Virus record (IMG/VR): IMGVR_UViG_3300044700_000691
Span: 62,001-126,000 of that record
Reading direction: 5' to 3' (one strand)
DNA: 64,000 bases
Below, piece after piece: positions 20,015 to 41,100 of this stretch. The position numbers were made by a program, and so were the translations under genes. Each line of letters starts with the position of its first letter. The first letter of the stretch is position 1. The notes under the pieces are model-generated. The model saw only the letters and a list, made by a program, of their open reading frames with translations, made no database searches and was not told the DNA's origin.

Positions 20015-23000
20015 TTATCTATTTTCAAGATTTTCAATTCTCTCGGTTAATTTTTTAATTATTTCATGCTGTTCTTGAATTGTCTTAATCAAGATTGGCG
20101 CGATACGAGTATAGTTAATACCATCAACTTGACCTTCACTATCATATTTAACTAATTCAGGATAGATTTCAGCAACCTCTTCCGCAATTAAACCAATTTC
20201 AGTTTCGCCAGTTCCACCAATTTTAACATAGTGAACTGGTCTTAGTTGTAAGACTTTATCTAGAGCTGGAGTTAGGGACTCAACTTGAGTTTTATATCTA
20301 ATAGATGATAATTCTATTAATCGATTTGCGATTGTTAGGGTTCCAGTATTACTTACTTCAAGTAAACGGTCTCCATCAATTGCACCTTGCCATATAACGA
20401 AATCATCCATTGTATTTGCACCACCGCCGACTCCACCGTCTGTATTTAGCACAAAATGGTGACCTCCTCTAGATTGGTATTCTAGCCAATAATTAGAGCC
20501 TGCTGCAAAACCTTCGCTTGGATAAGCTGCTGCTCGAATTATATTATAAAATCCGCCAGATCCGTCTCTAAATGCAAGTTCGCCGATGATATTTAAGTTT
20601 CCACTAAGGGTACCTCCACTTAGTGATAAGTAGTAGCTATCTGTAACCTGACTCCTAAAGTGACCAGGCGTAGATTTTCTTAAATAGTTATCACTTGTAT
20701 TTTGAGTCCAAATTTGACCAATAGTTGGGTTTTCTGAGTTACCAGCAGAAGCATTAAAATATGATCCTAAGACATAGTTTGAATAGATATTTCCGCTAGA
20801 GTCTCTTCGTACAATTGTATTTACGTTTGCTGCAGTATCTGAAGTATATCCATCCAATAAATCTGCGTCTAAACCAGAACCAGCTCCATCATTTCCTGCA
20901 TGCCAAGGCGTATATCCAAGAGCAGTAGTAACGTTTCCGCTTGTTATACTTGTTAAATATCCACTGTTATTAGTAAACTGTGAAATATTCATTGAGGTTA
21001 AAGCTCCGGCAGTGGTTGCAGTAGCAGCATTGCCGCTAATATTAGTTTGATCTCCTGTATTTGTACCAGAAGATGACCCACTAAAGTTAGTTGCACTTAT
21101 GGTGCCAGTAACAGAAAGGTTACCCCCACTAGTTAAAGATAATCTTCTAGCAGCGTTCCATTGAATAACAAAATCTGCACCAGCCGCCCCACCAGATCTA
21201 GTCATACCAAGTCTCCAGTGGTCGTTGTACCATTGATATTCATGACCAGAGACTAGGTCATTTGTGGTGTACGAAGATGGAATGTATACAGCAACCTCTC
21301 TTCCTTCACTACCGGTTATTGTTATTGGAGTTGACGTGGTTGCTCCTCTACCTGTTACACTCGCTAGAGTATCGGTTTCTGTATATCCAGTTATGTAACC
21401 TTGAGAAGTTACCCATGATTGAGTTGCTAATAGGTTTCCAGCTGCATACGGTACATATTTAAAATATGCAGTATTTGCAGTAGTTATTTCAAGCGCAACT
21501 ACAGTTGGATCATAGATATCACCATATCCAAGTTTAAAGCTATTTGTGTTAGCATTATTAGTCATTCCCATCGACCACATTGGTGCTCCTGTGTAATCCC
21601 AAGCAGTTCCTTGATATGTGCCCATGGCGGTCATAAACATTAGTGTTGCCTGATTCCCTGTTCCTTGTCGGCTAATGAATACTCTGGCAGTTCCTGTTTT
21701 AGCGCTAACATATAATTCTGGATTAGATCCAGCCAATTGAATTTGTGCTGGGTTAGCACTAATTGGAGAAATGTACAGATTTCCTGTCATTTCATCTCCA
21801 CCTATATTAACATATAGCCCGTCTGCTGTTGCTTGAGAAATTCCAGTTGATGCAAGCGTTACAGAGTTACCTCCTGAAATACTTAAGGTATTTCCAGAAA
21901 GACTAAGCGTTTGTGCATCAGTATTTGTATCAGTATCAATATCTGTCCAAGTTGCAGTTACTGTGCCTCCATCTCTTTGTGTAAGAGTTAGGGTTTTTGA
22001 AGTTGTTCCACTAACTGCAGCTGAAGTTATTGTATCATTATATGCAGAATTCCAATTCGCTGAAGTACCATGACTTGGCGTAGAAATTCCACTTGCATTA
22101 ATTACAATAGGCGCAGAAAAGGGTCCAATATTAACAGTATTATTAGCAAAGGCTTCGATTACAGGAAGACCTGCTACCGTATTTACTGAAAATAGAGAAT
22201 TTGAAAGATCATCACTTACTGTGAACAGTCTGCCATTAACTCCGTTTACTGCAAATAATTCCTGGCCGCTGGTTGAACCAGTAATTACTAAAGGCCCAGT
22301 CATTGTGTCGCCAGTTACATTAACATATAGCGGATTAGCTGCTGCTTGTGTTAACCAGCCGCCATAGTTTCCTAAGTCATTAGAGAATTGAGAAAGAGCA
22401 GTAGGTCTGCCTGTTACTCCAGTCCATGCTACATTCGTAGCGGTAGCAGCGTTTCCAGAAATACCAATTGCCCAAGTGCCGTTTTCCCAAACGTAATTGT
22501 AACCTGAACCAGTTTTTAAATTACCATCAGTTGCTAAATAAAATTTAAGAGCTCCAGATTGAGTAAACTTAATTTCTTCGTTTGAGTCATCTTGTGTACC
22601 AATTTCAAGGTAAGATCCTCCAGCCTGGTTGCCGGTTGATATAAATTTAATAAATGCGGCATCTGTATTTAATCCCCAAGTAAGTCCTAATCCAGATGTT
22701 GCACCAAAGGCAAGATTACCAGTCATTGTATCACCACTTTTAGAAACTTTGTTTCCTATTGATGTGGTAATTGTGGTAGCAAAATTAGCATCATTACCTA
22801 ATGCGGTAGCTAATTCGTTAAGTGTGTCTAGTGTACTAGGAGCCGATGCAACTAAGTTAGAAACAGCTGTGTTTACATAGGTTTGAGTTGCATATCCAGA
22901 AAGAGCGGAGGTTGTAATATAAGCTGGGCCATTGGTTAATTGGTTTAGGTTAGTTAAGTTACCAGCTGTCCATACTTGTGAGTTATCCCAATATAGCCTT

Positions 23001-25897
23001 TGGTCTACTCTCATTTCTAAGAACTTACCAACCACACCACTAATATGAAATGCTATACCGGTCGTTGTGTTGTTATAGGATTCAGTCCAAAGAGCAGCTG
23101 TTGTATAATCGCCGTCGCCTTGCGCTTTTCGAGCGTATAATCCGCCTGCAAATACAGAAGCAGTATTTGTGGTTGCACCACGTCCGGTTACACTAGCAAG
23201 AGTATCAGTTTCTGCATAAGATGTGATATAACCTGCTCCGTTTGTTAACTGATTGTTATTAGTAGGTATTGTTATAACTCCAGTTGTAGCGTTATATGCG
23301 CCACTGCCTGCCGTAAAGCTATGAGCAGCTCTAGCCAAAGCATCCGTATATTGTGTTATTGTAGAACTAATAGCACCAGTTGTATTGTTATAACTAATAC
23401 CTGTGCTTCCACTTAAAGAAGTTAAAGTAATATATGAGCTTGAATCAACGGAACCATCTGCTTTTAAGAATTGGGTACTGGTTCCTCCAGCTTTTACAAA
23501 TGAATTTGCTGTAAAATTACCAGATCCATAAATAGCTCCACTTGGATCAACATATGCTCTAACTGATCCGCCTGACATAAAATTAAGCCGGCCGTACATG
23601 GTTGAACCATCTCTATGAACAATAGGGAATTGATCAATACCTTCGCCATTATCAATTGCGATATTAACGGTTTGTAGATTGACGCCTAAACCAGCTTGAG
23701 GAGTGAATGTAATTTCCCATGTATCAATGAAGTTTGCTCCACCACATGGAATTTTCCAAAATGCAAACTGACCAGTTATGCTTATGTCAGATCCAGTGAA
23801 TGGGCCATAATACACACCGCTTGTATTTCTTACTCTAACCGTAACGTTAGCGGGCGGATAGTTTACCCAGAATCCAAGATAAACGTTACCACTTGAATAA
23901 ACTGCATTTTCTCCATTATTTAATCGGTAGGTTCTAACCCAAGTACTCCCGGCATTTGGATAAGTTCCAGTATAAGAATCAGTTTGTGTATATCGGTTAC
24001 TTCCACCAAATAATAACTCTTTTATAATTACCGGGTTAACTGTAATAGTTTTTCCAGAGAACACACTTTGGGTAATATAATCGCCATATGTAACTGCATT
24101 AGTAATACCATATCCAGCAAGAGTAGTAGGATTAGATCCTGCTGTAACTCGGCCTTTTGCATCAACTGTTACTGATTTATAAGTAGAAGCAGTAACTCCA
24201 GTATTTGATAATGCAGTTGAAATTGAGGTTGTTCCAGATCCAGTAATATCACCGCTTAGTGTTATTGTTTGGTTTCCGGTAATATATGTATTTGTATCTA
24301 GTGACCAAGTATTTGCAGCAGTTTTCTTTAAGAATCCGCTGGTTGCTGCAAGTGCAGCAATTGCATCTAAATCTCCGTCCCATGCCTGAACGTCAGTTCC
24401 AATTACAACTCCTAAGTTAGTTCTACCGTAACCCTTTTGGGTTGCAGTAAGACCTTGTGTATTAATATCAACTCTTAGTCTATTACCCAAGGCGGTAGAT
24501 ACGGTAGTTGAGAATGAAGCGTCGTTTCCTAATGCTGCAGCAAGTTCGTTTAGAGTATCTAATGCAGCTGGCGAGCTTGCTACTAAATTAGAAACAGCTG
24601 TGTTTACATAGGTTTGAGTTGCATAACCTTGTGTTGCGTGATTACCCCATCCGTATGCTGTATTCCAATTGTTTACATCGGTTTGTGTAAAGTTTCCGGT
24701 TGTCCATGCATCAACATATGAAGAATAAGGACTAGTTGAACCCCAAGTTTGTTGCCAAATGCGCATTCCAATACCAGATTTCTTGAACATGATAAGGTTA
24801 TCTGTTCCACCAGACGAATCTGTATAAGAACGCATGTGTATAAAATCTGCGTATGGAGAATTGTTATCATTAGTCCATGACGTAAAACCAAATTTCATTT
24901 GGCCAGCTGTCAGTTCACTGGGAGATATTGTTCGGTTATCTTCTCTAATTAAAGTTCCAGCATATCCTGAAATATTTGTAACAGAAGTTAAATAGCCTGC
25001 GGTAGCGTGATTACCCCATCCGTATGCTGTATTCCAATTAGATTTTTCAGTTGTTGTAATTGACTTAACATGAGAAGGTACAGTCGGATCAGTTTCTGTA
25101 TAGGAAGTAATATAATTTGGAGTCCAATTAACCCATTGCGATCCATTAAATTGTAATAGCTGATTAGTAGCAGCCGATGTTATTGTAACATCAGTTAAGC
25201 TGTCTAAGTTTGTTGGAATTGAAATATTAGTTGCAGATACGGCAGTAACCAAACCTTTGGCATTAACTGTAATTACAGGAACTGCTGTCGCTGAACCAAA
25301 TTGGCCAACGTTTGAGTTAACTGTCGCTAGGGCTAAACCTATATTGCCGTTTGCTGTTAATGGTGAGTTTGCAATTGTAAAGTCTGCACCAGTAATTCCA
25401 ACTGAAGTTAAGGGCGGGGTTACTGTATTATAACCAATCGTCCACCAATAAGTTGTACCATCATAGTAAACTCCTAAGACATCAGTTGCATTTGCAGCTG
25501 GACTTGCAGTATAGGTACCGCCGCCAACAATTGAACTTGAGCCTGGCAGGGTTAGGGTTCGGCTACCAGCTGCATCTTGTTTAACCAAGATTAAACCAGT
25601 ATCGCCAGTTTCCATATTGGAAAGTACTAACGTTCTAGCTCCAGCGAGGGTTACCTTTGCATTTGCTCCAGAGTTAAAGTCCCAAGTAATAGCTGCGCCA
25701 TCAGTCAGGGTTTGCTGAGCCATTGTAACCTTACCATTAACCTTAAGATTGCCGGCAACTGTGAATTTTTTAGTCGCCTGTAGAGTTAATGTAAGATTGC
25801 CATTATCATCATGCTGTAGATACGGTTTGTTCGACGTAGTATTACCTATGAATTCTAATAAACCGGATGCGGGAGTTATCTTGACCGTTTGCGCCAC
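20015..25897 (-). CDS. Long tail fibre (1960 aa, GTG start) with a C-terminal peptidase S74 chaperone (20015-20308)
   Basis: Fibre repeats (VTVDAKGRVTAG, LDTLNELAAALGND, GSGLDADLLDG). C-terminus L|SSIRYKTQV...LRPVHY...GLIAEEV...LIKTIQE. Confidence 0.9.
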   Translation of the reverse strand: MAQTVKITPASGLLEFIGNTTSNKPYLQHDDNGNLTLTLQATKKFTVAGNLKVNGKVTMAQQTLTDGAAITWDFNSGANAKVTLAGARTLVLSNMETGDTGLILVKQDAAGSRTLTLPGSSSIVGGGTYTASPAANATDVLGVYYDGTTYWWTIGYNTVTPPLTSVGITGADFTIANSPLTANGNIGLALATVNSNVGQFGSATAVPVITVNAKGLVTAVSATNISIPTNLDSLTDVTITSAATNQLLQFNGSQWVNWTPNYITSYTETDPTVPSHVKSITTTEKSNWNTAYGWGNHATAGYLTSVTNISGYAGTLIREDNRTISPSELTAGQMKFGFTSWTNDNNSPYADFIHMRSYTDSSGGTDNLIMFKKSGIGMRIWQQTWGSTSPYSSYVDAWTTGNFTQTDVNNWNTAYGWGNHATQGYATQTYVNTAVSNLVASSPAALDTLNELAAALGNDASFSTTVSTALGNRLRVDINTQGLTATQKGYGRTNLGVVIGTDVQAWDGDLDAIAALAATSGFLKKTAANTWSLDTNTYITGNQTITLSGDITGSGTTSISTALSNTGVTASTYKSVTVDAKGRVTAGSNPTTLAGYGITNAVTYGDYITQSVFSGKTITVNPVIIKELLFGGSNRYTQTDSYTGTYPNAGSTWVRTYRLNNGENAVYSSGNVYLGFWVNYPPANVTVRVRNTSGVYYGPFTGSDISITGQFAFWKIPCGGANFIDTWEITFTPQAGLGVNLQTVNIAIDNGEGIDQFPIVHRDGSTMYGRLNFMSGGSVRAYVDPSGAIYGSGNFTANSFVKAGGTSTQFLKADGSVDSSSYITLTSLSGSTGISYNNTTGAISSTITQYTDALARAAHSFTAGSGAYNATTGVITIPTNNNQLTNGAGYITSYAETDTLASVTGRGATTNTASVFAGGLYARKAQGDGDYTTAALWTESYNNTTTGIAFHISGVVGKFLEMRVDQRLYWDNSQVWTAGNLTNLNQLTNGPAYITTSALSGYATQTYVNTAVSNLVASAPSTLDTLNELATALGNDANFATTITTSIGNKVSKSGDTMTGNLAFGATSGLGLTWGLNTDAAFIKFISTGNQAGGSYLEIGTQDDSNEEIKFTQSGALKFYLATDGNLKTGSGYNYVWENGTWAIGISGNAATATNVAWTGVTGRPTALSQFSNDLGNYGGWLTQAAANPLYVNVTGDTMTGPLVITGSTSGQELFAVNGVNGRLFTVSDDLSNSLFSVNTVAGLPVIEAFANNTVNIGPFSAPIVINASGISTPSHGTSANWNSAYNDTITSAAVSGTTSKTLTLTQRDGGTVTATWTDIDTDTNTDAQTLSLSGNTLSISGGNSVTLASTGISQATADGLYVNIGGDEMTGNLYISPISANPAQIQLAGSNPELYVSAKTGTARVFISRQGTGNQATLMFMTAMGTYQGTAWDYTGAPMWSMGMTNNANTNSFKLGYGDIYDPTVVALEITTANTAYFKYVPYAAGNLLATQSWVTSQGYITGYTETDTLASVTGRGATTSTPITITGSEGREVAVYIPSSYTTNDLVSGHEYQWYNDHWRLGMTRSGGAAGADFVIQWNAARRLSLTSGGNLSVTGTISATNFSGSSSGTNTGDQTNISGNAATATTAGALTSMNISQFTNNSGYLTSITSGNVTTALGYTPWHAGNDGAGSGLDADLLDGYTSDTAANVNTIVRRDSSGNIYSNYVLGSYFNASAGNSENPTIGQIWTQNTSDNYLRKSTPGHFRSQVTDSYYLSLSGGTLSGNLNIIGELAFRDGSGGFYNIIRAAAYPSEGFAAGSNYWLEYQSRGGHHFVLNTDGGVGGGANTMDDFVIWQGAIDGDRLLEVSNTGTLTIANRLIELSSIRYKTQVESLTPALDKVLQLRPVHYVKIGGTGETEIGLIAEEVAEIYPELVKYDSEGQVDGINYTRIAPILIKTIQEQHEIIKKLTERIENLENR
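22857..22894. repeat. Exact 38-bp direct repeat with 24588-24625
   Basis: ttagaaacagctgtgtttacataggtttgagttgcata, encoding YATQTYVNTAVSN. Confidence 0.9.
24636..24670. repeat. Exact 35-bp direct repeat with 25005-25039; a diverged copy lies near 19447-19481
   Basis: gcgtgattaccccatccgtatgctgtattccaatt, encoding NWNTAYGWGNHA. Confidence 0.9.
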
Positions 25898-27977: not shown

Positions 27978-28904
27978 TTATGCAAGCGTAACTGTGCCTC
28001 CGCTAAAATATTCAAGCAGAATAAGATCAGTGGTTTCTAATCCATGTTCTAAATATGCAGGCCTCGTATAAAGTGAATCTCCTGCCTGCACTTGAGCTAA
28101 TAATAATTGATTTATACCACCAGTTCGGCTAAAAAAGAAAGGAGACGTATTTGAATCTGTTAAGAGTCGTCTTACTCCATTTATACTTATACACACAGTT
28201 GAATCTATATGAATTGCTTTAGTAATTGCAGAGTTTGATGCTAGTGAATAGCTGCCAGTATTTGAAGTATATGACACTTGATTAGCATTGCCTTGTTCAG
28301 CACTTGGAGTAATTGGCGCAACTAGACTTGGAATAACTCGAATATGGCCTCGCATTACGCTTTGGTGAGCTGTACATACATAGAAAAGATCGTCTGGCGC
28401 GTCAAATGGAACTGTCCATAAGATATAGCCGCCGCTACCTTGAGTATTTGTACCGGCACCGCTAGTCGGCATGCCAACTGAATAGGCTGTGCCATTTGCA
28501 CTTCGGATTTGCAGAGTGTGACCTATACTTGAGGCAACTTTAAATTTGTAAATATTTCCTCTAAAAACATAAATCGTTGGATTTGCATTATTACCACTAT
28601 TAAAATCAGCGGCTTCATTAACTAACCATGCAGTATTTTGAAGATGTGCAACAAAAGTTAATAAGTTAGCATTGGTTGGTGAAAATTCAATAAGATCTGC
28701 ATCCAATACTCCGTCCTTAAACCAATACATTTGGTTATCAACACCATTGGCGATTCGGACCTGCATGGTTGGGAATCGAATAGCTTGTGGAATATTAGCT
28801 AATGCTTCAGTTGTTGTTGCATATGGCCCAGAGTACCCGTCGACTGGAACCGGGTTAACTGGTGTAATACCATACGGTAATTGAAGTCCTGGTGTAAAAC
28901 TCAT
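27978..28904 (-). CDS. Virion protein with a cupredoxin-like domain
   Basis: NPTIYVFRGNIYKF...GHTLQI...WTVPFDAPDDLFYVCTAHQSVMRGHIRV supplies an H, C, H, M ligand set. Confidence 0.65.
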   Translation of the reverse strand: MSFTPGLQLPYGITPVNPVPVDGYSGPYATTTEALANIPQAIRFPTMQVRIANGVDNQMYWFKDGVLDADLIEFSPTNANLLTFVAHLQNTAWLVNEAADFNSGNNANPTIYVFRGNIYKFKVASSIGHTLQIRSANGTAYSVGMPTSGAGTNTQGSGGYILWTVPFDAPDDLFYVCTAHQSVMRGHIRVIPSLVAPITPSAEQGNANQVSYTSNTGSYSLASNSAITKAIHIDSTVCISINGVRRLLTDSNTSPFFFSRTGGINQLLLAQVQAGDSLYTRPAYLEHGLETTDLILLEYFSGGTVTLA

Positions 28905-28906
28905 GG

Positions 28907-31138
28907 TTATGCGATAGTTATTTGGTGACGGTGATCTGCACTATATGGAATAGCATTGGTCAGCGTGTATATTTTATATGCAACCGGTGTTCCTCCTCCA
29001 TCATTAACATTAAATGTTGAAAGTGTATAATTTGCTGTGATATTTGCGTTTAGTGCATCTAGGTCTAATACTTGAGTTAGGGACATTGTTGCAGGAATGG
29101 CTACTGTAAATATTGTTTGAGCTGCTCCTGTATTTAGGGTAAATGTATTACCAGCATCAGTAAATCTTTTGCCAGATAAGGCTCTAACTCCAGCTGAATT
29201 AGATGGCGCGCTTGCACTAGGTCCATAGAATACCACGTATTTGTAAGTTATGTTATATGAAGCAGTTGCAGTTGTATAAGAATCTGTAACAGAAACTCGA
29301 TAAATTGCGCTAGTTGCTGATGATGTAATTGACGTATCAGTAAAGTTAGTAAATGATCCGCCGGCTGCCACTAGGGATCCAGCTGTTCCGATATTTGTGT
29401 AAGATCCACCATTAAATGAAACTGCATATTGGAATCCACTAATTGGAACATATAGTCGGTTTCTGGAAGTAGATCCCTGTAAAACAGATGAGGTATTACC
29501 GCGTTCTCTAATTTGATTACTTTCAATTGATAGTGAAAGAGTCGAAGCTGGCGCGCTAAATGAAATACTTGGTGATTGATAAGATTGCGGAGTAATTGTT
29601 AAAGTTGCAGTTGCGGTAGCTCCAGCACTATCTGTTACGATATATTGATAATTAAAAGGTTGAGTATTAAAAGCCGAATCTGTTAGAGTGTGTGTATATG
29701 TAGTTGCACCCGTAGTTGACGTTAAGGTAGTCCATGTACCAGAATTATTACGTCTCCACTGTAAAACAGCAGTTGCCGTAGTTGCACCAAGTGTATTAAT
29801 GGTTTTAGCAAAGACTAGCACGTTTGAAATTGCAGTTTGATTAAATAAGATACTGGTAGAGGAACTTAGGGACACGGTAGGAGCAATTGGTTCCTGTGCA
29901 ATAAGGTTAAACACCTCTTCAGCAGTTTTACCCGCTGCGGGAATTGTGTCGCCAGATATAAATCGTCCAACTGTTTTACCATTTGGTAAACTTACAAAAA
30001 CGTCTGCTGAAAATGTAGGTGGCGAAATCGGTCTTACAAAAACAGTTACCTTATCGCTAGATGGATCAGCTACTGCTAAAATTGATGAACTTAAATTAGC
30101 TGGACCTTCCTTGAAATCAAGTTGCTCCATTTTAGTTAAGATCGTTGCAGGCTCGGTTGATGCAATATCGGTTCCATCATTACTTATAGTAAAGGCTGAA
30201 ACTGAATTAAGGGCCTCAGTATCAATTCCAATTGAAACCTGTTTTGTAGTTGAATTAAAATTAATATTAATTCCACCCTCTCCAGCAATTCTGATTATAT
30301 CATTAATAGAAGCAGCTTCAAATTGAATTGCGCCGCTTGCGCTTGCAATTTTAGAAAAACCTGGAGTTTGAACAGGCGAGTTAATAGTTACCTTATTGGT
30401 TGCACCATTAAATGCAACAGTAGTATCACCAGTACCTTCAATTCTAAATGTACTTTGTGGACCGCTTGCACTTAATTGAATATTACCAAGTGCATTTGCA
30501 ATTTGACTAAACGAATTAGTTGAAACATTTGCTGAGCTAATTATAACCCGCTTGGTTACGGCATCTAGACTTACTGTGGTTCCACCCTGACCCTCAAAAC
30601 CAAGGGTATCAGTTGCACTACTTGCACCAAATATTACAGTTCCTTGAGAATTTGCAATTCCAGTAAAAGCTGTTCCGACTGGGCCGCTTGCGGCTTGGCC
30701 GCTAGATAGTTTTACCCAACCGTTATTTTGAGTATATCCATAAAATCCCTCTCCAGCTGGAGCGGTATTATTTGCATAGATAACATCTCCAATAAGACCG
30801 GCTGCACTGAGCTTACCAGTATTATCCTGTAATCTAAGTAAAGGTGTTTGAAATAGGTTAGCAAGGGCAGATTGGGTTGTTAATACGCCATCTGCATCGA
30901 CCTGCATTTTAATAGAGCCGTTTTGTACGACCCTGATAGTAGAACTTGCTGTAATACCAACTGCTGCAATCTGGTTAACCGAAATATTGTTATTGGTCTC
31001 ATCAAATGAGATTGCAGTTAAAAACGCTTGGATAGCCGCCTGTAAGTTATCAAAATTCTGGTTAGACGTCGATATACTCGAGCTTAAGCTTGAATCAGAT
31101 AAATCGGTAATGTTTGTTAAGTTAGAATAGACTCCCAT
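28907..31138 (-). CDS. Virion structural protein with three internal repeats and Ig-like C-terminal domains
   Basis: Three F..IA...G....A........G.G...V/I repeats; Thr/Ser-rich beta domains; N-terminal SNQNFDNL motif. Confidence 0.6.
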   Translation of the reverse strand: MGVYSNLTNITDLSDSSLSSSISTSNQNFDNLQAAIQAFLTAISFDETNNNISVNQIAAVGITASSTIRVVQNGSIKMQVDADGVLTTQSALANLFQTPLLRLQDNTGKLSAAGLIGDVIYANNTAPAGEGFYGYTQNNGWVKLSSGQAASGPVGTAFTGIANSQGTVIFGASSATDTLGFEGQGGTTVSLDAVTKRVIISSANVSTNSFSQIANALGNIQLSASGPQSTFRIEGTGDTTVAFNGATNKVTINSPVQTPGFSKIASASGAIQFEAASINDIIRIAGEGGININFNSTTKQVSIGIDTEALNSVSAFTISNDGTDIASTEPATILTKMEQLDFKEGPANLSSSILAVADPSSDKVTVFVRPISPPTFSADVFVSLPNGKTVGRFISGDTIPAAGKTAEEVFNLIAQEPIAPTVSLSSSTSILFNQTAISNVLVFAKTINTLGATTATAVLQWRRNNSGTWTTLTSTTGATTYTHTLTDSAFNTQPFNYQYIVTDSAGATATATLTITPQSYQSPSISFSAPASTLSLSIESNQIRERGNTSSVLQGSTSRNRLYVPISGFQYAVSFNGGSYTNIGTAGSLVAAGGSFTNFTDTSITSSATSAIYRVSVTDSYTTATASYNITYKYVVFYGPSASAPSNSAGVRALSGKRFTDAGNTFTLNTGAAQTIFTVAIPATMSLTQVLDLDALNANITANYTLSTFNVNDGGGTPVAYKIYTLTNAIPYSADHRHQITIA

Positions 31139-31184: not shown

Positions 31185-32495
31185 TTAAAGAGCAATCTCA
31201 GTCTTAGAATCTTTAGTTGCGTGGTATGAAAGTGGTGATCCTACAACAAGACACTCAGTTAAATCCGCTGAAACTTGCATGTTTGGTTGACCTTTAATTG
31301 TTGATTGCTGAATTGTATTAACGCCAGATTGGTTAAAGTTGCAATTAGATAGAGTTGAGTATCTAATATCATTTTTATCAAAAATTGTACACTCTAAAAG
31401 TCTAGAACTTCTAACTTTACAGTTGACTAGTGTACAGTCAGAAAGTTCAGCTTGAATTGAAGACTCCATAAAAATAATATTTGATAGATTAAAACCATTT
31501 TTTATTCGACCTTCTAAAACTTCAACTTGATTTGTTTCTGAATTATAATTTACACGGCCTCTAACAAGTCCGCCATATGTTACCAGGTCAAAAAGTTTTT
31601 CCCTAACCAGATTAAACTTAGCACCAAGTATTTCTGGCCTTGAATCTAGATCCATTGATAATTTAATAAGTGGAAATTTAGTTTCAAAGGTTGCATAAGA
31701 TTTCAAGGCAGTTAAGTGTGACTTTTGTTCGGTTAAGATCTCTTTAATTTTTTCGCGATCTCTATCTGAATAGATTGAATTTGATTTTAAGGTTGAAAAA
31801 AGAGACTCTATTACCAGGTTTAATAATTCAACGGCTTGGGTATTTCTCTTTTCGTAATCCTTTCCACCAATATACTTTATAGTTACAAAACCTTCACTAA
31901 TTCTGTCGAAATTAATTCCAAACTGTTTTGATCTGGGAAAGCTAAATTCCATTTGTGAAGAATAGCTGCCAGACGGCACCGCAGCCTCGGCTATAAATTT
32001 ATTTTTTGGGTATATTAAATTTATAGAGTGTTTATAGATTTTACTTGAGCGAATCTCCTGTGGCCATAATTCAAAGGCTTTAGCTTCATTAAAATTAAGT
32101 AAAAATTTAAATTTATTTAGCTGAGGAATTCTTGCTCCTTCATTCATTTTAGAGAAACCTAAATCAATTTTAACTTTACACAATTCGTTAGTGTACCCGT
32201 TATCTTCAATAAACTTAAATGATTTAAGAAGAGCATTGACTCCTTCATAATAATAGACTGGGCCAATTGTCATTCGCTTCATTTTAAATCCGTTATTATA
32301 GAGATTGGTTAGTCTTGCTCCATTTTCCTGTAAAGGTTTCCAAGCATCTTTAGTTGCGCCAACCTCAATTTCTCTGTGTAGTGCAGATTTGGCTTTTTCT
32401 GCAAGCTGCTGAATTGATTTATTTGAAAAGAAATCAACTGTAAGCACAAATTGTGCGGATTCTACCTGTTCCCTGTTTTTAATGTCTAGTATCAT
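31185..32495 (-). CDS. Amidoligase (COOH-NH2 ligase)-like protein with a degenerate active site and a C-terminal beta-helix-like region
   Basis: Scaffold motifs GP..Y, GYTNELC, KQFGINF and YIGGKDYE are retained, but the catalytic E/H/R positions are replaced. Pentapeptide-like repeats at the C-terminus. Confidence 0.6.
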   Translation of the reverse strand: MILDIKNREQVESAQFVLTVDFFSNKSIQQLAEKAKSALHREIEVGATKDAWKPLQENGARLTNLYNNGFKMKRMTIGPVYYYEGVNALLKSFKFIEDNGYTNELCKVKIDLGFSKMNEGARIPQLNKFKFLLNFNEAKAFELWPQEIRSSKIYKHSINLIYPKNKFIAEAAVPSGSYSSQMEFSFPRSKQFGINFDRISEGFVTIKYIGGKDYEKRNTQAVELLNLVIESLFSTLKSNSIYSDRDREKIKEILTEQKSHLTALKSYATFETKFPLIKLSMDLDSRPEILGAKFNLVREKLFDLVTYGGLVRGRVNYNSETNQVEVLEGRIKNGFNLSNIIFMESSIQAELSDCTLVNCKVRSSRLLECTIFDKNDIRYSTLSNCNFNQSGVNTIQQSTIKGQPNMQVSADLTECLVVGSPLSYHATKDSKTEIAL

Positions 32496-32503
32496 AGTTT
32501 ATG

Positions 32504-34567
32504 TTATCTGTTTATACCAATATAAGGAATATTTAATCTTGGACGGCAGTTATCAATTATACGTAAAATTGATTCATCTTTAATGAATAACTGACTAATT
32601 ACAAAATCATGGTCCTCCTCTTGAACCATTGTATTAAAGAGTCTTATATTTGCAATATCAATTGGTGATGATACTAGTCTAAAGTTTTCGTTAATTGAAA
32701 AACTAAATGAACTTGCACCAGTCAAGGTTTTCGCTGAAGTATGGATTTGAGAAATATCATTAAAATTATTTAAATTCGCTGGATCCTGATTAAATCCATA
32801 TATAGTTAGGGCAGTTTGTTTAAATTGACTAGAGACTGGCACAAATATTGCATACCACTTATCAATTTCTAATCTAACTGTATTAAATTGAGTTAAGGTC
32901 GAATTTATTTCAAGCCTAATTGAAACGTTTTTATCAGTTGAATTATTAATTGCAATTGAAGTACCATCTAACTTTAATCCTTGTGATAAATTATTATCGT
33001 ATGCATCAATAAAACTAATTGAATCGGTTAGGGCATTAATTTTAAATAGCGCAAAGTAAGTCATATTAGATTTGTCTTCTCCTAATTTTCCAATTTCATT
33101 ATAGACAACACTATAGTCTCTGGTTAAAATATGTACACGGCCATTTGTATCTGGCTCAAACGCTAATTGGTTTGGTGTAAAGAAATTAGAGTCAGCATAT
33201 CTGTCAATTTTAATATATCGGCCAAGCAGTGGATCGTTTGAATTATATGGGCCTCTAATTTTAATTGGAGCGCCATTACTTAAGTCATATGTTGTTAATT
33301 TATAGCCAGCCCATAAGGAAAATAGTTCAGATTCTTCATATGCAATTAAGGTATATTTAGTTGCAGCATCTTCATATTTAACCGAATCCTTTGTAAAATT
33401 TGAGGTTTTTGGTGTAACTGTAATAGGTAAACTTGGCACACTCTTACTTTCATAATAATATTGAATTAGTGGAGAATAGTTGTAGGTTAGGGTCAATTGC
33501 TTGATTTTAAGATCTGGGTGTAGTGCCTTACGGGTTTCATCAAAACGGGTTGAAATCGTTTTAAATTGCTGAGGCATTGTTGCATCCTTAACTTCGTCAA
33601 TCATTTGATCTGCAAATAATTCATCTGTGCTGGTAATAATATTATCCAAGAAAGTTCGGTCTTCCGCTTTCATCATCATATCAATATTTGGCTGAAACTT
33701 AACCAATTGAATTTTCCAATAAACTGGCTCCTGCATAATTCCACGATATAGGTATGTACCCTGAATCTCGTACATTCTGTTAGTTAATGGAAAATAGAGG
33801 AAATCCTTTTTGCGAGGATTCGACGCTGCGCCAAAGATCGTTTGGAAATATTGGTTATCAATATGGATTTCGAATGGCATTTCAAAATCCACACCAAACT
33901 CTGCGTATGTAGGCTTATTATCTGGAAATTTATTTCCGGGTACAAGCACCTTAATGCATTTTCTGCTAATTGTTTTGAATAGAGTCCACTCCTTGAACAC
34001 GTAGTCCGCAGAGTCTCTATCTGGTTCGGTTTTAAAGTAAACAACCTCATGTCCAAATAATTTGTTAGTATTAAAGCTTAATTGTTTAAAAATATTTACA
34101 GCCTGGTCTGCAGCATATGGATTAAACGACATGGTGCCAGTTGAAATAAGAGCTGGACAAACCTCATCGCTACAAACTATGCTTGGTGTAAATAGGCTTG
34201 GAACAGAATCTGCTGCAACAATTTTAAATTTAATTTCATTTACAACAATTGGATTAGTAAGCTGATTCCTAGTTGTATTATTGTATTCATATTTTAATTC
34301 AACAAATAGATCAGCATTATTAAAAGCAAGTGCGGCAATGTCTGCAATATCGTACCACAGAGACCAGTTTCCACGATCTGTCGAATATCTAAATTTTTTA
34401 CTTAGATAGTTTTGGTTATTGCCATTTAAGTCAACATCGTCAGTAAAACTTGTAATCGAATAGGCTCCCGGTAAAGGATCCTTTGTTGAAAATAGTCTAT
34501 AGTTACTGCTGAATGTCAGACTTGATTTGGAAGTCTCCGGAATAAGCTTTAGGGTAACTGTCTGCAT
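32504..34567 (-). CDS. Neck / head-closure protein, T4 gp14-like, with N- and C-terminal extensions
   Basis: FGHEVVYF, FGVDFEMPFEIHID...F, PRKKDFLYFPLTNRMYEI and YWKIQLVKF match gp14-type motifs. Confidence 0.7.
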   Translation of the reverse strand: MQTVTLKLIPETSKSSLTFSSNYRLFSTKDPLPGAYSITSFTDDVDLNGNNQNYLSKKFRYSTDRGNWSLWYDIADIAALAFNNADLFVELKYEYNNTTRNQLTNPIVVNEIKFKIVAADSVPSLFTPSIVCSDEVCPALISTGTMSFNPYAADQAVNIFKQLSFNTNKLFGHEVVYFKTEPDRDSADYVFKEWTLFKTISRKCIKVLVPGNKFPDNKPTYAEFGVDFEMPFEIHIDNQYFQTIFGAASNPRKKDFLYFPLTNRMYEIQGTYLYRGIMQEPVYWKIQLVKFQPNIDMMMKAEDRTFLDNIITSTDELFADQMIDEVKDATMPQQFKTISTRFDETRKALHPDLKIKQLTLTYNYSPLIQYYYESKSVPSLPITVTPKTSNFTKDSVKYEDAATKYTLIAYEESELFSLWAGYKLTTYDLSNGAPIKIRGPYNSNDPLLGRYIKIDRYADSNFFTPNQLAFEPDTNGRVHILTRDYSVVYNEIGKLGEDKSNMTYFALFKINALTDSISFIDAYDNNLSQGLKLDGTSIAINNSTDKNVSIRLEINSTLTQFNTVRLEIDKWYAIFVPVSSQFKQTALTIYGFNQDPANLNNFNDISQIHTSAKTLTGASSFSFSINENFRLVSSPIDIANIRLFNTMVQEEDHDFVISQLFIKDESILRIIDNCRPRLNIPYIGINR

Positions 34568-34647: not shown

Positions 34648-35448
34648 ATGAAGACTAACCTAAATGTGCCAGTCCTGGATCCACTATGGCTGGCAAATTC
34701 TAAATATGTTGACCTTGAATATTATAATTACGTTATGCTTGGTGCTAAACAAAAGTATCTTGCGGATCTTAAAGCTGGATCTTTTACTAGATTCCACGAA
34801 ATCCTATTTCACTACCTAAATTTAAATACAGTTATTGTTGATAGGGGCGTTTTCGACTCTGCCTATAATTTTAAAAAGGACGATCGTCACGTAATGGAAA
34901 TTATTGCATCTTTAACCCGAAACCGGGAAGAGTATGGCGGAGAAATCTTAAGAATGTCCTCAACCATTCTAGCAGAAGTTCTTACTGAATATTTAGATAT
35001 TATGTTAGATCGACTAGCCTATACTCGACTCTACTTTAATTCAGCAAAATTTCACAAGTTAGATTCGATTTATGTTGCAACTACACAAAATAGAGCTAAA
35101 CTTAATCACATTTGGAAAATTACCAAAGAGAAAGGTGTACCCTTTATGATTAAAGCAAATCACCTAATTGAAATAAACGAATTTTCATGTGAAGACGGCG
35201 AATTTAGCGAACTATTAGGTCAAGTTAAGCCAGAAATTACAGATTTTTCAGCTAAGAAAAATGTCATGGTATTATCTTCAGTAAAGAAAATTAAAGACGA
35301 AACTCTATTTGAACTAGCGTTAGCTACAATTGTTGCTAATAAACTTCTGAATCACTCTAGTGGCTTCAATTCAAACATCTTATTGGATATTAAGTCCATG
35401 TTAGAAAGAGGCCAGGTGATCCCGTATAAGCTTAGATCCTTAACTTAA
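34648..35448 (+). CDS. Hypothetical protein (266 aa)
   Basis: Intact ORF filling the gap between minus-strand genes, with its own promoter motif. Confidence 0.75.
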   Translation: MKTNLNVPVLDPLWLANSKYVDLEYYNYVMLGAKQKYLADLKAGSFTRFHEILFHYLNLNTVIVDRGVFDSAYNFKKDDRHVMEIIASLTRNREEYGGEILRMSSTILAEVLTEYLDIMLDRLAYTRLYFNSAKFHKLDSIYVATTQNRAKLNHIWKITKEKGVPFMIKANHLIEINEFSCEDGEFSELLGQVKPEITDFSAKKNVMVLSSVKKIKDETLFELALATIVANKLLNHSSGFNSNILLDIKSMLERGQVIPYKLRSLT

Positions 35449-38122: not shown

Positions 38123-41100
38123 TTAGATAAATTTCATTTTTGGTTCAATTATTAAACTTAATCGACCGGTTGTTTTTAAGGGAATTCTTAATTGAACAGA
38201 TCGTCCGTCTTTAATATTTATTTGGACTCCTTCTAGTTTCTTGTACCCTAACGCATAGCGCTCTGCCGCGGTTTTGGTAATAATTTCAAGGCCAGTCGGC
38301 TGGCTCTTATCTTCTATGTACCAGAATACAAGTTGGTCAATTGCATAGTTAGGTAAAATGTTCTCGATTGCATACTGTTTAACGTATGACGAAAAATCGT
38401 ATGATCCAAGTATTTCTGGATTTCTAGCAGTTGTATCAATATCAAAGCTGCCTGAAATTTGAGATTCTAGGCCTAATGATAAGACCTTTGCTGCAAAAAC
38501 ATTAGTTAAGTTTATATCAACTTGAGAGTCGCTAGTGTTTACTTTGTATAAAACGTCAGCCTCTCTATTAATATAGTCAGCCGAAATCGATGGAAACTCC
38601 AGTATTTCGCTAGAAGAAAGTGAATCTATTTCAATAGACGTCGGTAGCGAGGCAAGTTTAGCCATAAAATAAGAATCTTCGGCTATACGTCGGGTGCCGT
38701 ATGCTGGAATAGAATCAGTTTTATTAATATATTCTAAATGGAAGCCATAGTCCCAATTTGATGCAAGTAAATAAAGGTCACCGTTTGAGATTGGAGTTTC
38801 TCCAATTAATTCAAAGATTGGTTTATACTTATCGTTACCTTCCAGCTCTAGAATTTTCTTTTCTGAAACTTTGATATGTTCAAATCCTTTTACTTCAAAG
38901 AATCGATTTGCGTTTGGATTAAATTTGCAATTTGCGTCTTTAACTATTTCTAAATTTAAAGTTGTATCTGGCATAAATGCGGTAACTTCTCTAAAAATAG
39001 GAGAATAGGTTGAACCGTGTCTTCTTAGGAAAACCGGATTTTGTAAATACGATTCAGTTGCAGTATAGCCAACTAAGTTGGATGCCTGTCTTTTACTTGT
39101 AGTTTCGGCTTGCGTTAATTGTAGATTAACTGGTGAAACAGTTGGTATCTTTAATTTTTCAACAATGGTAGCCTCTTCAATTTCAATATAAAACTCATTT
39201 GTTGTTTTTACTCCGTTTGAATAGGTAGTATAGGTTACATTATCTCGGCCTCTATCAATTGATCGCTTAAACTCATTGAAACTTAATCTCTTAAATAATC
39301 CTTTGTAATAAGATTCTCCTCCAAGCAAAAGGGCAAAGTTTACTGATTCCCAATAACTAGTATCAAACGCAGGGATAGTTGATTCTCTTTTAATAATTTT
39401 ATCAATATTAAAGGTTGTTGCACCTGAAACAGTTTGTGCAGTTGGAATACCGGTAAATGCAAGTTCGCCAATTCCAGAGTCAGATCTCATTACAACACCA
39501 CTTGGCAAAATCTCCGAAATACCAGATTCATTTGATAATCTATAGATAGTTTGCTTAATTATTCTAAGAAGTTTTTTGTTTGCATCTCCTGGATAAGCTA
39601 AAATATTAAAGACTGAATTTGTTTCTGATGCCAGTACTTGTGCATTTGGATAGGTATATCCGGTGTCGCCAGTAGCTGTATTTTTTAATTCTAAAATATC
39701 AATAACGTTTAATAAAGTAGTACCTGCATAAGCTACCCGGTTTTGTGTAGCAAGCGCATGGCTAATATCCGATTGATAAAAATTAATAGGCGCCGCCGAA
39801 TTTTTTTGGAAAAATTTGACAGTAACGGCTGACCCAGTTGAGGTCGCAGCTGCCGATAACGTAACTTTAGTTATAAGTTGGCCGTTTGCATCAAGCGCAG
39901 CATTATTAACGCTAACTACATAGGCATTGGCCGGAATACCAGTGCCTGTTACATAGACTTTATTTGACGCATTATAGTTTAAACCAGTTGAATCACCATA
40001 CGATGCTAATTCTAAATTTGTATCGGCTTGTAAATATAGGTCAGCTGAACCTGATGTAATAGCGGCAGGCCGACTTTGATTTGATATATTTGATACAATT
40101 GCCTTGGACAAGGTTACGGCTGTGCCATTAACTGAATTGACTCTGGTTCCAGGCTTACTCCATCCAACAATTTCAACTTCAGATCCAATTAAAATTGAGG
40201 TGGCTGGCGCTGAGCTTAGCGTGATAATCGAAGAACCTCCTTCTACACTAGCAGTTACAGCTGGACTGAGAGCACTTCCAATTATTGTAGTTTGGTTAAC
40301 AAATGATTCTTTAATACTGTTTGATGTAATAATTCGGTTTTTAATAAATGGATATAAACTTAGTCCAGCTACACCATATGCATTATTTTCAGTTGTCGTA
40401 ATTCCTTGTGAAGTTCCTCCAGGAAGAGTAATAGTAGTTAAGGCTTGACCTTCTCCACTTGACAGGAGTCCATTTGAATTAATTGGAAAATCTAGCGTAA
40501 ATTCTTCTGGATTAGCTGTACCAAATACTTTAATTATAGTGGAGTCTTTATACGATAACATACTATTAACGCTAACTTTATTAATCTCGTCAGCTATTTG
40601 AATATCCGAGCCTTTATCTAACGAAAATACAAATGGTAACCCTCTGTCTCCATATCCAGCCGGCCTTGATAAATCTAAACTATTTACTAGATTTATGCTA
40701 CTGTAACTGTTAGCTAGTGTATTATACTTTTTGTTTTTTGCATAATACATAAAGGCTAACGTAATATCAGAAATTGATAGAATCCCGTTAGCCGTACTAA
40801 TTTGATTTATATTAAGTTTATAGTCAGAAAATGAAGCTGGCATATTATTGAATACATGCTGTTCATTTTGAGAAAGGCCGCCGGTTTTAGTTACAAGTAA
40901 TTCGGTTGGACTGGACACCAATGCATTTGATTTACGGCTAACTCTTAATTCAACTATTAACGTAATAAATTTAAAGTCTCGTGATTCAATAAATTTAAAT
41001 TGAATAGGATTTTCACCAGAGTATGGTGTCTCTTCTATTACCTTTAGGATTGACGTAAAACGATAATTATTAAAACGATTGGATTCTCTAACATATTTAA

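What the first reader, a model, noticed from the sequence alone, without database searches (positions are those of the whole stretch)
31185..32495. Apparently catalytically dead amidoligase retained in the neck operon
Known: phage COOH-NH2 ligase/amidoligase proteins conserve G-x-E-x-E, E-x-x-(S/T)-(G)P, H-x-H/N and E-F-R motifs. Seen: the equivalent positions read LTVDFF, RMTIGP, CKVKIDL and VTIKYIGG, while the surrounding scaffold (GYTNELC, KQFGINF, GGKDYE) and the 436-aa ORF are intact. The gene follows the gp14-like gene. Inference: a pseudoenzyme repurposed as a structural, peptide-binding or regulatory subunit, possibly partnering an active paralog elsewhere in the genome.
Basis: partly seen in the sequence, partly recalled or inferred. 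Interest (0 to 1): 0.6.

Follow-up and report, generated by a model that had tools for sequence, protein, structure and literature searches.

The report
Dead amidoligase beside a phage fibre gene
A freshwater giant phage keeps, under strong selection, a protein with the fold of an ATP-dependent amide-bond ligase whose catalytic residues have all been replaced; it is always encoded just before a tail or neck fibre gene, so an enzyme seems to have become a non-catalytic helper or part of the virion.

Summary
The 436-aa ORF (31185-32495, minus strand) is intact.

**Fold.**
- Residues 1-240 fold like the glutamine-synthetase catalytic domain (Z 11.3). Phage "amidoligase enzymes" are the best viral look-alikes.
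- Residues 311-436 form a pentapeptide-like beta-helix.
- Full-length homologs at about 37% identity pass Pfam's cut-off for Amidoligase_2. The window protein itself does not match.

**Loss of the motifs.**
- Of 110 non-redundant family members, 39 keep every motif residue scored. Four of the five distant huge-phage homologs used as outgroup are among them; the fifth has one change.
- The window's clade and a second clade have lost them. The nine pocket residues scored go from a net charge of -5 to about +1.6.

**Not decaying.** dN/dS is 0.03-0.1, lowest in the dead domain.

**No active paralog.** None is found in the 216.8-kb phage record, which is 84% complete.

**New here.** In all three clades the gene sits directly upstream of a fibre gene with a shared 150-aa N-terminal domain and unrelated C-terminal parts.

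**Best reading.** It is a pseudoenzyme serving attachment or assembly of that fibre. This role is inferred from gene order, not shown. It is a new variant of a known family and of moderate interest.

The parts
31185..32495 (-). 436-aa ORF (P0001): pseudo-amidoligase fused to a beta-helix
   Evidence: There are 127 family members. The model has mean pLDDT 81.9 and pTM 0.70.
31776..32495 (-). Residues 1-240: glutamine-synthetase-like (Amidoligase_2) domain with its catalytic residues replaced
   Evidence: VIA-align: human GS 2ojw_A Z 11.3, rmsd 3.4 A, 178 aligned; several other GS chains Z 9.5-10.4; Dop Z 8.4. BFVD phage amidoligases E 2e-10 to 1e-3. Homologs pass PF12224 at 27.9-32.3 bits against a cut-off of 22. 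dN/dS is 0.028.
32427..32447 (-). Motif 1, VLTVDFF, in place of GFEFEFF (first metal-binding ExE strand). E19 became T and E21 became D.
   Evidence: E. coli GlnA reads GPEPEFF at the corresponding motif. The motif lies in model strand 14-23.
32262..32309 (-). Motif 2, TNLYNNGFKMKRMTIG, in place of EPDxSGGxKxxELxTG. Changes: E63 to T, D65 to L, E74 to R, T77 to I.
   Evidence: The motif lies in model strands 60-67 and 70-81.
32157..32177 (-). Motif 3, KVKIDLG, in place of GxHINxS. Changes: H109 to K, N111 to D, S113 to G.
   Evidence: A non-significant hhalign match places the family's GFHINMSL on GlnA's GMHCHMSL. The motif lies in model strand 107-114.
31863..31886 (-). Motif 4, VTIKYIGG, in place of LE(V/F)RYxGG. 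E205 became T and R207 became K.
   Evidence: GlnA reads IEVRFP. The motif lies in model strand 204-210.
31566..31775 (-). Residues 241-310: helical linker
   Evidence: Helices 244-263, 267-273, 287-296 and 298-307 in the model. This is the least conserved part of the protein.
31188..31565 (-). Residues 311-436: short right-handed, pentapeptide-like beta-helix with invariant Cys354, Cys359, Cys385 and Cys415
   Evidence: Pfam Pentapeptide_4 E 8e-4, 19.8 bits, below the cut-off of 38. VIA-align: pentapeptide proteins 2j8k and 2xt2 Z 8.6, rmsd 2.6-2.7 A; other right-handed beta-helices Z 9-10, rmsd 2.3-2.5 A. Invariant columns.
32504..34567 (-). Upstream 687-aa gene, weakly T4 gp14 / head-closure-like. 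It lies directly upstream of the homolog in clade A loci and one clade B locus; in another clade B locus a 107-aa ORF intervenes.
   Evidence: PF11649 at 19.7 bits (cut-off 25), and 23.2 bits in a 45%-identical ortholog. phrog_679 Hc2 E 1.8e-7. Orthologs at 45% identity in L001 and L005.
28907..31138 (-). Downstream 743-aa fibre-like gene, the conserved partner gene
30689..31138 (-). N-terminal 150-aa domain of the fibre gene. It is found directly downstream of the amidoligase-like gene in all three clades, ahead of unrelated C-terminal parts.
   Evidence: BLASTP: 27-34% identity to the first ~150 aa of the downstream genes in L001, L003 and L005, E 1e-10 to 8e-22. Alignment A3. The clade C partner is a collagen-like tail fibre, PHROG E 4.7e-33.

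Best explanation
The gene encodes a pseudoenzyme.

**Shown**
- The protein descends from a phage-specific fusion of an Amidoligase_2 domain (glutamine-synthetase fold, an ATP- and Mg-dependent carboxylate-amine ligase) with a short pentapeptide-like beta-helix.
- The ancestral state kept the full set of metal-, ATP- and substrate-binding residues: ExE, ExD, E..T, HxN, ExR.
- In the window's lineage every one of these was replaced. The nine pocket residues scored went from a net charge of about -5 to about +1.6.
- After that burst of change the whole protein, the dead domain most of all, has been held under strong purifying selection.
- The gene always lies directly upstream of a fibre gene. 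That fibre's first ~150 residues are conserved, while the rest is exchanged between phages.

**Inferred**
- The protein can no longer bind the Mg-ATP cluster or make an acyl-phosphate, so it is not a ligase.
- Its retained job is non-catalytic and concerns that fibre. It either binds the conserved N-terminal anchor domain as an attachment or assembly factor, or joins it to the neck or tail as an adaptor subunit.
- The remodelled, now basic pocket and/or the beta-helix would serve as the binding surface.
- Two of three clades dispense with the catalytic residues yet keep size, architecture and gene position. This suggests the non-catalytic job already existed in the active ancestor.
- T4 gp63 is a precedent: its ligase activity and its tail-fibre-attachment activity are separable.
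For: **Homology and fold**
- Full-length homologs at 36-39% identity (E about 1e-90) pass the Pfam Amidoligase_2 cut-off over profile positions 2-238 of 245.
- The model (pLDDT 81.9) matches glutamine synthetases at Z 9.5-11.3 over residues 1-250.
- It matches phage amidoligases at probability 1.00.

**Loss of the motifs**
- Alignments and per-clade counts.
- Four of the five outgroup huge-phage homologs (24-27% identity) keep every motif residue scored. The fifth has one change, L for E63.
- GlnA carries the same motifs in the same order.
- All four motifs fall in core beta-strands of the model.
- Net charge of the nine pocket residues scored is -5.0 in intact members and +1.6 in the window clade.
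- Positions 21 and 111 alternate between D and N inside the window clade, so no acid is required there.

**Burst of change, then constraint**
- Stem branches are 1.83 (window clade) and 1.77 (second dead clade), against 0.13 for the intact clade.
- N-domain identity to the outgroup is 33% for the intact clade and 22-23% for the dead clades.
- dN/dS is 0.04-0.14 overall and 0.028 in the N-domain.
- The ORF is intact in every family member recovered.

**Link to the fibre**
- The conserved N-terminal domain lies directly downstream in clades A, B and C, with unrelated C-terminal parts giving proteins of 743, 678, 654 and 1532 aa.
- The clade C partner is a clear tail fibre.
- Structural genes surround the family everywhere examined:
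  - a neck-like gene in clades A and B;
  - a gp6-like wedge gene in clade C;
  - a head-tail adaptor gene near one huge-phage homolog.

**gp63 precedent**: PMC3004832.
Against: - No direct evidence that the protein binds the fibre or is in the virion. The one complex prediction gave no verdict.
- Residue-level superposition on a liganded GS structure could not be done. Assigning each motif to metal or ATP binding rests on motif order, the Pfam family and knowledge of GS.
- Profile-sequence alignment to GlnA is not significant.
- No member of this subfamily, active-looking or not, has a tested activity, so 'ancestrally a ligase' is itself an inference.
- Gene adjacency in a long late operon can reflect co-expression only.
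- No BLAST-detectable fibre N-domain was found next to the huge-phage homologs.
Confidence: 0.6

Rival explanations
1. The protein is still an enzyme with a different chemistry. The remodelled pocket (T19, D21, T63, R74, K109, D111, T205, K207) forms a new, metal-independent active site. It could be a hydrolase or transferase acting on the same kind of substrate, or a nucleotide-binding site that uses Arg and Lys instead of Mg.
For: The replacement residues are themselves well conserved within the clade: T19, T63 and R74 in 27 of 27 sequences, K/R109. The N-domain has the lowest dN/dS, 0.028. The fold includes enzymes that run the reverse or a hydrolytic reaction, such as Dop, which matches at Z 8.4.
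Against: D/N alternation at positions 21 and 111, T/S at 205 and K/N at 207 inside the clade argue against fixed catalytic acids or bases. The second dead clade uses quite different residues at the same sites (C/V, A/S, T/V, Q/S, K/T/Q, I/V/N, N/K). It nevertheless keeps architecture and gene position, which is hard to reconcile with one new chemistry. From general knowledge, Dop-type hydrolases keep the ATP and metal residues.
Confidence: 0.12
2. The job has nothing to do with the virion. The pentapeptide-like beta-helix acts as a DNA mimic or decoy, as Qnr and MfpA do on gyrase, or the protein serves host takeover or anti-defence. It sits in the late operon only for timing.
For: There are weak pentapeptide-repeat matches and fold similarity to Qnr, AlbG and MfpA.
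Against: The beta-helix has only about 110 residues, compared with 180-220 in Qnr-type proteins, and lacks a significant family match: 19.8 bits against a cut-off of 38. Other right-handed beta-helices (adhesins, pectate lyase, bactofilin) fit as well or better. The immediate linkage to a fibre gene with a conserved N-terminal domain holds across three clades at 27-34% identity. Chance or timing alone would not be expected to give that.
Confidence: 0.15
3. One reading: the dead subunit works as a regulatory or scaffolding partner of an active amidoligase paralog encoded elsewhere in the same phage.
For: Pseudoenzyme-enzyme pairs are common in general. The record is only 84% complete.
Against: A six-frame search of the 216,815-bp record found nothing with PF12224 at E up to 1. 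With the family's own profile it found only the gene itself.
Confidence: 0.05
4. The ORF is a decaying gene remnant or a mis-called ORF.
For: It gives no direct Pfam or PHROG match to the enzyme family.
Against: dN/dS is 0.03-0.1 with synonymous sites near saturation. The 435-436-aa ORF is intact in all clade members. The fold is predicted with confidence. The sequence is present in assemblies of RNA libraries from three studies.
Confidence: 0.01

Closest known systems
Pfam PF12224 Amidoligase_2: phage and bacterial carboxylate-amine ligases of the glutamine-synthetase fold
   Same: The N-terminal domain is homologous, shown through full-length relatives that pass the family cut-off. The fold is the same. 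The order of the four motif-bearing strands is the same.
   Different: The window protein gives no direct match to the model. All conserved acidic, His and Arg residues are replaced. It carries a C-terminal beta-helix. It sits in a virion-structure module beside a fibre gene. The phage amidoligases described so far lie in peptidoglycan-modification cassettes (PMC5498523) or DNA-hypermodification gene clusters (PMC8989533).
Glutamine synthetase (E. coli GlnA, human GS 2OJW)
   Same: The catalytic-domain fold matches (Z 11.3, rmsd 3.4 A, 178 residues). Motif-intact family members carry GxExEFF, HxN/HxS and ExR strings like GlnA's GPEPEFF, GMHCHMS and IEVRFP.
   Different: Sequence identity is 6-10%. 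There is no N-terminal beta-grasp domain. The sequence-profile match is not significant. In the window protein the metal ligands are gone.
T4 gp63 (RNA ligase 1 and tail-fibre attachment protein)
   Same: This is a functional analogy only. gp63 is an ATP-dependent ligase that also promotes the joining of fibres to the particle, and its mutants separate the two activities (PMC3004832). Here a ligase-fold protein is tied by gene order to a fibre, and its catalytic residues are dispensable in two clades.
   Different: The fold and chemistry are unrelated: gp63 is a nucleotidyl-transferase ligase acting on RNA. gp63 keeps its catalysis. No fibre-attachment activity has been shown for the present family.
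Pentapeptide-repeat proteins (Qnr, MfpA, AlbG, Np275/276)
   Same: The C-terminal 110 residues show five-residue periodicity with Cys, Ser or Thr and a hydrophobic residue pointing inward. They fold as a right-handed beta-helix (Z 8.6, rmsd 2.6 A).
   Different: The match is below the family threshold (19.8 against 38 bits). The helix is about half as long as in these proteins and is fused to another domain. Other right-handed beta-helices fit equally well.
PafA/Dop of the pupylation system (GS-fold protein ligase and deamidase)
   Same: The fold is the same (Dop, Z 8.4). They show that a GS-fold enzyme can act on a protein substrate, which makes a fibre-directed ancestral activity conceivable.
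   Different: There is no detectable sequence relationship and no Pup-like gene was seen. This is a lead only.

Membership tests
Pfam PF12224 Amidoligase_2 | The protein itself matches the family HMM at or above the gathering score (22 bits) | tested here: not met
   P0001 gave no PF12224 hit at E up to 1. None of the window-clade or clade C members scanned hit it either.
Pfam PF12224 Amidoligase_2 | Homology to bona fide members, by transitive full-length similarity | tested here: met
   P0030, P0043, P0045 and P0048 are 36-39% identical to P0001 over 99-100% of its length (E 1e-87 to 1e-102). They score 27.9-32.3 bits on PF12224 over profile positions 2-238 of 245.
Glutamine-synthetase-like carboxylate-amine ligase superfamily | GS catalytic-domain fold | tested here: met
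   VIA-align gave Z 11.3, rmsd 3.4 A over 178 residues to 2ojw_A, and at least ten other GS-type chains at Z 9.2-10.4. Foldseek probability to GS was 0.93-0.96, although E was only about 2e-3. BFVD phage amidoligases matched at E 2e-10.
Glutamine-synthetase-like carboxylate-amine ligase superfamily | Conserved metal-, ATP- and substrate-binding residues (ExE strand, further Glu/Asp, HxN/H, ExR) | tested here: not met
   The window protein reads T19, D21, T63, L65, R74, K109, D111, T205 and K207. At these positions intact members read E, E, E, D, E, H, N, E and R: 36 of 36 in the intact clade, except E19 at 35 of 36.
Glutamine-synthetase-like carboxylate-amine ligase superfamily | ATP-dependent amide-bond formation | not testable with these tools
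   This needs an ATPase or ligation assay on purified protein.
Pseudoenzyme (a homolog of an enzyme that lacks catalytic residues yet is maintained by selection) | The catalytic residues are lost relative to an ancestral active state | tested here: met
   Four of the five outgroup huge-phage homologs and the intact clade keep the motifs. The tree rooted on the outgroup places the losses on the stems of two clades.
Pseudoenzyme (a homolog of an enzyme that lacks catalytic residues yet is maintained by selection) | Purifying selection acts on the dead domain | tested here: met
   Nei-Gojobori dN/dS for the N-domain is 0.028 (window against P0018 and against P0019). Overall values are 0.04-0.14. 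pS is 0.6-0.75, so dS is near saturation and the ratios are rough.
Pentapeptide repeat family (PF13599 and relatives) | HMM match at the gathering score | tested here: not met
   19.8 bits against a cut-off of 38. PDB profile matches to Qnr and MfpA had E 0.26-0.47.
Pentapeptide repeat family (PF13599 and relatives) | Right-handed quadrilateral beta-helix fold | tested here: inconclusive
   2j8k and 2xt2 matched at Z 8.6, rmsd 2.6-2.7 A. TibA, pectate lyase and bactofilin fit as well, at Z 9-10.
   Pfam gave 19.7 bits for the window protein, 23.2 bits for a 45%-identical ortholog and 18.0 for another. phrog_679 'head closure Hc2' matched at E 1.8e-7 over profile positions 18-221 of 251.

The most novel reading that the evidence does not exclude
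The motif-intact members of this family are ATP-dependent protein ligases. They would covalently modify or cross-link the conserved N-terminal anchor domain of the neighbouring fibre, in a PafA-like amide or isopeptide ligation during virion assembly. The window's dead version would then be a substrate-trap descendant that holds the same domain non-covalently. That would be an enzymatic post-translational step in phage fibre attachment that has been lost at least once, possibly twice.
Probability: 0.12. Interest if true: 0.8.

Novelty: new variant of a known kind. Interest (0 to 1): 0.55.

Why it matters
- **An untested family.** Phage amidoligases are widespread. In the papers I could read, their roles were stated only as predictions from sequence and gene neighbourhood.
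- **A concrete candidate partner.** This subfamily ties one of them by gene order to a specific partner: the anchor domain of a fibre. It also offers a natural experiment, with live and dead versions in the same architecture and the same gene position.
- **Directly testable questions.** Does the ligase fold serve fibre attachment? Was catalysis ever needed for it?
- **Annotation.** Hits to 'amidoligase' in huge freshwater phages should not be read as metabolic or DNA-modification enzymes without checking the motifs. About two thirds of the sampled family (71 of 110 non-redundant members) lack them.

Tried and rejected
- **Complex prediction** of the whole protein with the fibre's N-terminal 150 residues, using alignments A1 and A3: score 0.00, no verdict. 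It counts neither for nor against binding.
- **Residue-level mapping on glutamine synthetase by sequence.**
  - hhalign of the intact-clade N-domain profile against E. coli GlnA gave probability 0.7, which is not significant. It did align the HxN and HxH strings.
  - HMM searches of PDB sequences gave only weak pentapeptide hits or spurious RNase PH hits.
- **Foldseek against PDB** gave no match at E 1e-3 or better. The fold came out only with VIA-align wide and BFVD.
- **Search for an active paralog** in the phage's own record: none.
- **One loss or two.** In the quick ML tree the two dead clades fall on one side of a branch with support of only 24. Both sit on long branches, so this stays unresolved.
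- **Databases and literature.**
  - PHROGs and NCBIfam gave nothing for the protein.
  - The 2009 paper that defined the amidoligase families (PMC3268129) is not held, so the motif definitions rest on the alignments made here.
  - Paper searches found no report of a pseudo-amidoligase or a virion amidoligase.
- **RNA libraries.** Contigs from four metatranscriptome runs (three studies) cover the gene, most pieces without a mismatch. No silent control stretch was laid, and contigs cannot show strand or level, so transcription is not shown.
Full report
**1.

- The ORF at 31185..32495 on the minus strand is intact: 436 aa, ATG start.
- It begins 8 nt after the stop of a 687-aa gene.
- A word search found 59 relatives and a profile search raised this to 127. 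In a 20-sequence alignment the four strings lie in gap-free blocks opposite GFEFEFF, NELxTG, GxHINxS and YLEVRY of relatives at about 37% identity. Invariant columns flank them on both sides.

**2. What the protein is**

- *Direct family scans.* Pfam gives the window protein only a sub-threshold pentapeptide-repeat hit at residues 348-390. PHROGs and NCBIfam give nothing.
- *Transitive homology.* Full-length relatives at 36-39% identity pass Pfam's gathering score for Amidoligase_2, at 27.9-32.3 bits against 22, over nearly the whole profile.
- *N-terminal fold.* An AlphaFold model built on the alignment has mean pLDDT 81.9 and pTM 0.70.
  - Residues 1-250 superpose on glutamine-synthetase catalytic domains: human GS Z 11.3, rmsd 3.4 A over 178 residues; many others at Z 9.5-10.4; Dop at Z 8.4.
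  - Among predicted viral structures, the best hit is a member of this family itself. Dozens of phage proteins named amidoligase follow at probability 1.00. The ESM Atlas gives the same picture.
- *C-terminal fold.* Residues 311-436 form a short right-handed beta-helix with five-residue periodicity. It fits pentapeptide-repeat proteins (Z 8.6, rmsd 2.6 A) and other right-handed beta-helices about equally well.
- *Linker.* A helical linker (residues 241-310) joins the two domains.

**3. The catalytic residues are gone, and that is a derived state**

- I added five distant homologs from 460-735-kb uncultured phages, at 24-27% identity. Four of them keep every motif residue scored: GxExE, EPD, ELxTGP, HxN, LEFRY. 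The fifth has one change, L for E63.
- E. coli GlnA, read from its genome record, carries GPEPEFF, HHHEV, GMHCHMS and IEVRFP in the same order. These are the metal-, ATP- and substrate-binding strands of glutamine synthetase (established knowledge).
- Per-clade counts:

| Group | Sequences | State at the motif positions |
|---|---|---|
| Intact clade | 36 | E21, E63, D65, E74, T77, H109, N111, S113, E205, R207 in 36 of 36; E19 in 35 of 36 |
| Huge-phage outgroup | 5 | The same residues in 5 of 5, except E63 in 4 of 5 |
| Window clade | 27 | T19, D/N21, T63, L65, R74, I/V77, K/R109, D/N111, G113, T/S205, K/N207 |
| Second dead clade | 58 | Keeps only the second Glu and T77/G78; different residues from the window clade elsewhere |

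- Net charge of the nine pocket residues scored is -5.0 in intact members, +1.6 in the window clade and +0.2 in the other dead clade.
- D and N alternate at positions 21 and 111 inside the window clade, so no acid is needed there. That argues against residual metal binding.
- All four motifs fall on core beta-strands of the model.

**4. Evolutionary pattern**

- I built a maximum-likelihood tree of 110 non-redundant rows, rooted on the huge-phage sequences.
  - The intact clade sits on a short stem (0.13).
  - Each dead clade sits on a very long stem (1.83 and 1.77 changes per column).
- Whether the two losses are one event or two is unresolved. The dead clades share a branch with support of only 24, and both are long-branched. 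The different replacement residues favour two events.
- Against the outgroup, the N-domain of the intact clade keeps 33% identity. The dead clades keep 22-23%. The C-domains differ much less, at 24%, 20% and 24%. This fits release from catalytic constraint in the N-domain.
- Inside the window clade, selection is strongly purifying.
  - dN/dS is 0.04-0.14 overall.
  - It is 0.028 in the N-domain and 0.05-0.10 in the C-domain.
  - Synonymous sites are near saturation, so the ratios are rough, but pN is far below pS.
- This is a maintained pseudoenzyme, not a decaying gene.

**5. No active partner in the genome**

- The window lies in a linear virus record of 216,815 bp, estimated to be 84% complete.
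- A six-frame search with PF12224 found nothing. The family's own profile found only the gene itself.
The missing 16% prevents a firm negative.

**6. Context, and the main new point**

- The window is a virion-structure module. It holds a gp6-like wedge gene, several fibre-like ORFs of 1,200-2,240 aa, collagen-like fibres and the neck-like gene.
- The upstream 687-aa gene is only weakly gp14-like: Pfam 19.7 bits against 25, and PHROG Hc2 E 1.8e-7. Orthologs at 45% identity lie upstream of the homolog in the intact clade. One is adjacent; in the other locus a 107-aa ORF intervenes.
- The downstream link is tighter.
  - The first ~150 residues of the next gene recur directly downstream of the amidoligase-like gene in all three clades.
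  - Identity is 27-34% between clades, E 1e-10 to 8e-22.
  - The rest of that protein is unrelated, giving totals of 743, 678, 654 and 1,532 aa.
- In the second dead clade the neck-like gene is not adjacent, yet the pair persists. There the partner is an unmistakable collagen-like tail fibre, PHROG E 4.7e-33.
- A conserved N-terminus with swapped distal parts is the usual signature of a fibre's attachment domain (general knowledge).
- Near one huge-phage homolog lies a head-tail adaptor gene.

**7. Mechanism**

- *Shown:* the fold, the loss of residues, the selection and the gene pair.
- *Inferred:*
  - The protein no longer binds Mg-ATP or ligates anything.
  - It acts on or with the fibre's anchor domain, either as an attachment or assembly factor or as an adaptor subunit.
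  - This job pre-dated the loss of catalysis.
- *Closest working analogy:* T4 gp63, an ATP-dependent ligase that also promotes tail-fibre attachment. Its mutants separate the two activities (PMC3004832).
- *Binding test:* a direct computational test gave no verdict.

**8. Comparison with what is known, and novelty**

- Phage amidoligases have been discussed as parts of peptidoglycan-modification cassettes (PMC5498523) and of thymidine-hypermodification clusters (PMC8989533).
- I found no report of a dead one, of a fusion with a beta-helix, or of a link to a fibre gene. The held library is incomplete, and the founding 2009 paper could not be read.
- I rate this a new variant of a known family, of moderate interest.

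**9. Habitat and expression**

- The gene is found nearly identical in freshwater metagenomes. The runs that hold it come from 14 studies in all, DNA and RNA together.
- It is also in assemblies of RNA libraries from three studies. That is compatible with expression but does not prove it.

Noticed in passing
window 27978-28904 (-), compared with L014:12593-13900 and L015:8418-9695: The 308-aa gene has a C-terminus that matches PHROG 'baseplate wedge tail fiber connector' (E 1.5e-17). In two close relatives the same gene is 435 and 425 aa. Their first 308 residues are 80-88% identical to the window's, so the window phage lacks a C-terminal part of about 120 aa.
   Followed up: partly
window 34648-35448 (+): A 266-aa gene is the only plus-strand gene inside the long minus-strand structural operon. 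It keeps this divergent position next to the neck-like gene in clade A (84% identity) and clade B (29% identity, L005:2331-3125). It has no family match.
   Followed up: partly
P0001 residues 126-165 (window about 32001-32120, minus strand): A segment outside the catalytic motifs (LNKFK..L...NE.K.FE.WP ... YPKNKF) is the best-conserved stretch across live and dead clades alike. Invariant residues are N127, K130, E137, F141, W144, P145 and P163. It is a candidate for the shared, non-catalytic interface. The model's confidence is lower there (pLDDT 57-84).
   Followed up: partly
window 59702-61294 (+): A phage-encoded GroEL-type chaperonin (phrog_5725, E 1e-148). A 3'-5' exonuclease gene (58937-59686) and a RuvC-like resolvase gene (58060-58722) lie next to it.
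   Followed up: no
window 13287-20009, 20015-25897, 38123-44245, 44268-47942 (all -): Four very large ORFs of 2,240, 1,960, 2,040 and 1,224 aa lie in the same operon. In relative L014 the ~1,980-aa gene at the position of the 1,960-aa ORF carries a Peptidase_S74 (fibre intramolecular chaperone) domain. The 1,224-aa ORF matches phrog_29329 at E 1.7e-128.
   Followed up: no
L003:13988-16773 (clade C phage, 265.9-kb contig): Immediately beyond the fibre gene, on the other strand, lies a small sulfation cluster: a sulfotransferase (PF13469/PF00685) and an APS kinase (PF01583). A sigma-70-like gene and the large terminase lie a few kb upstream of the dead amidoligase.
   Followed up: no
L009:9068-10273 (LR756500.1, 462-kb phage): A homing-endonuclease-like gene (phrog_3339, E 7.5e-27) sits just after a head-tail adaptor gene, about 2 kb downstream of the motif-intact homolog.
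   Followed up: no
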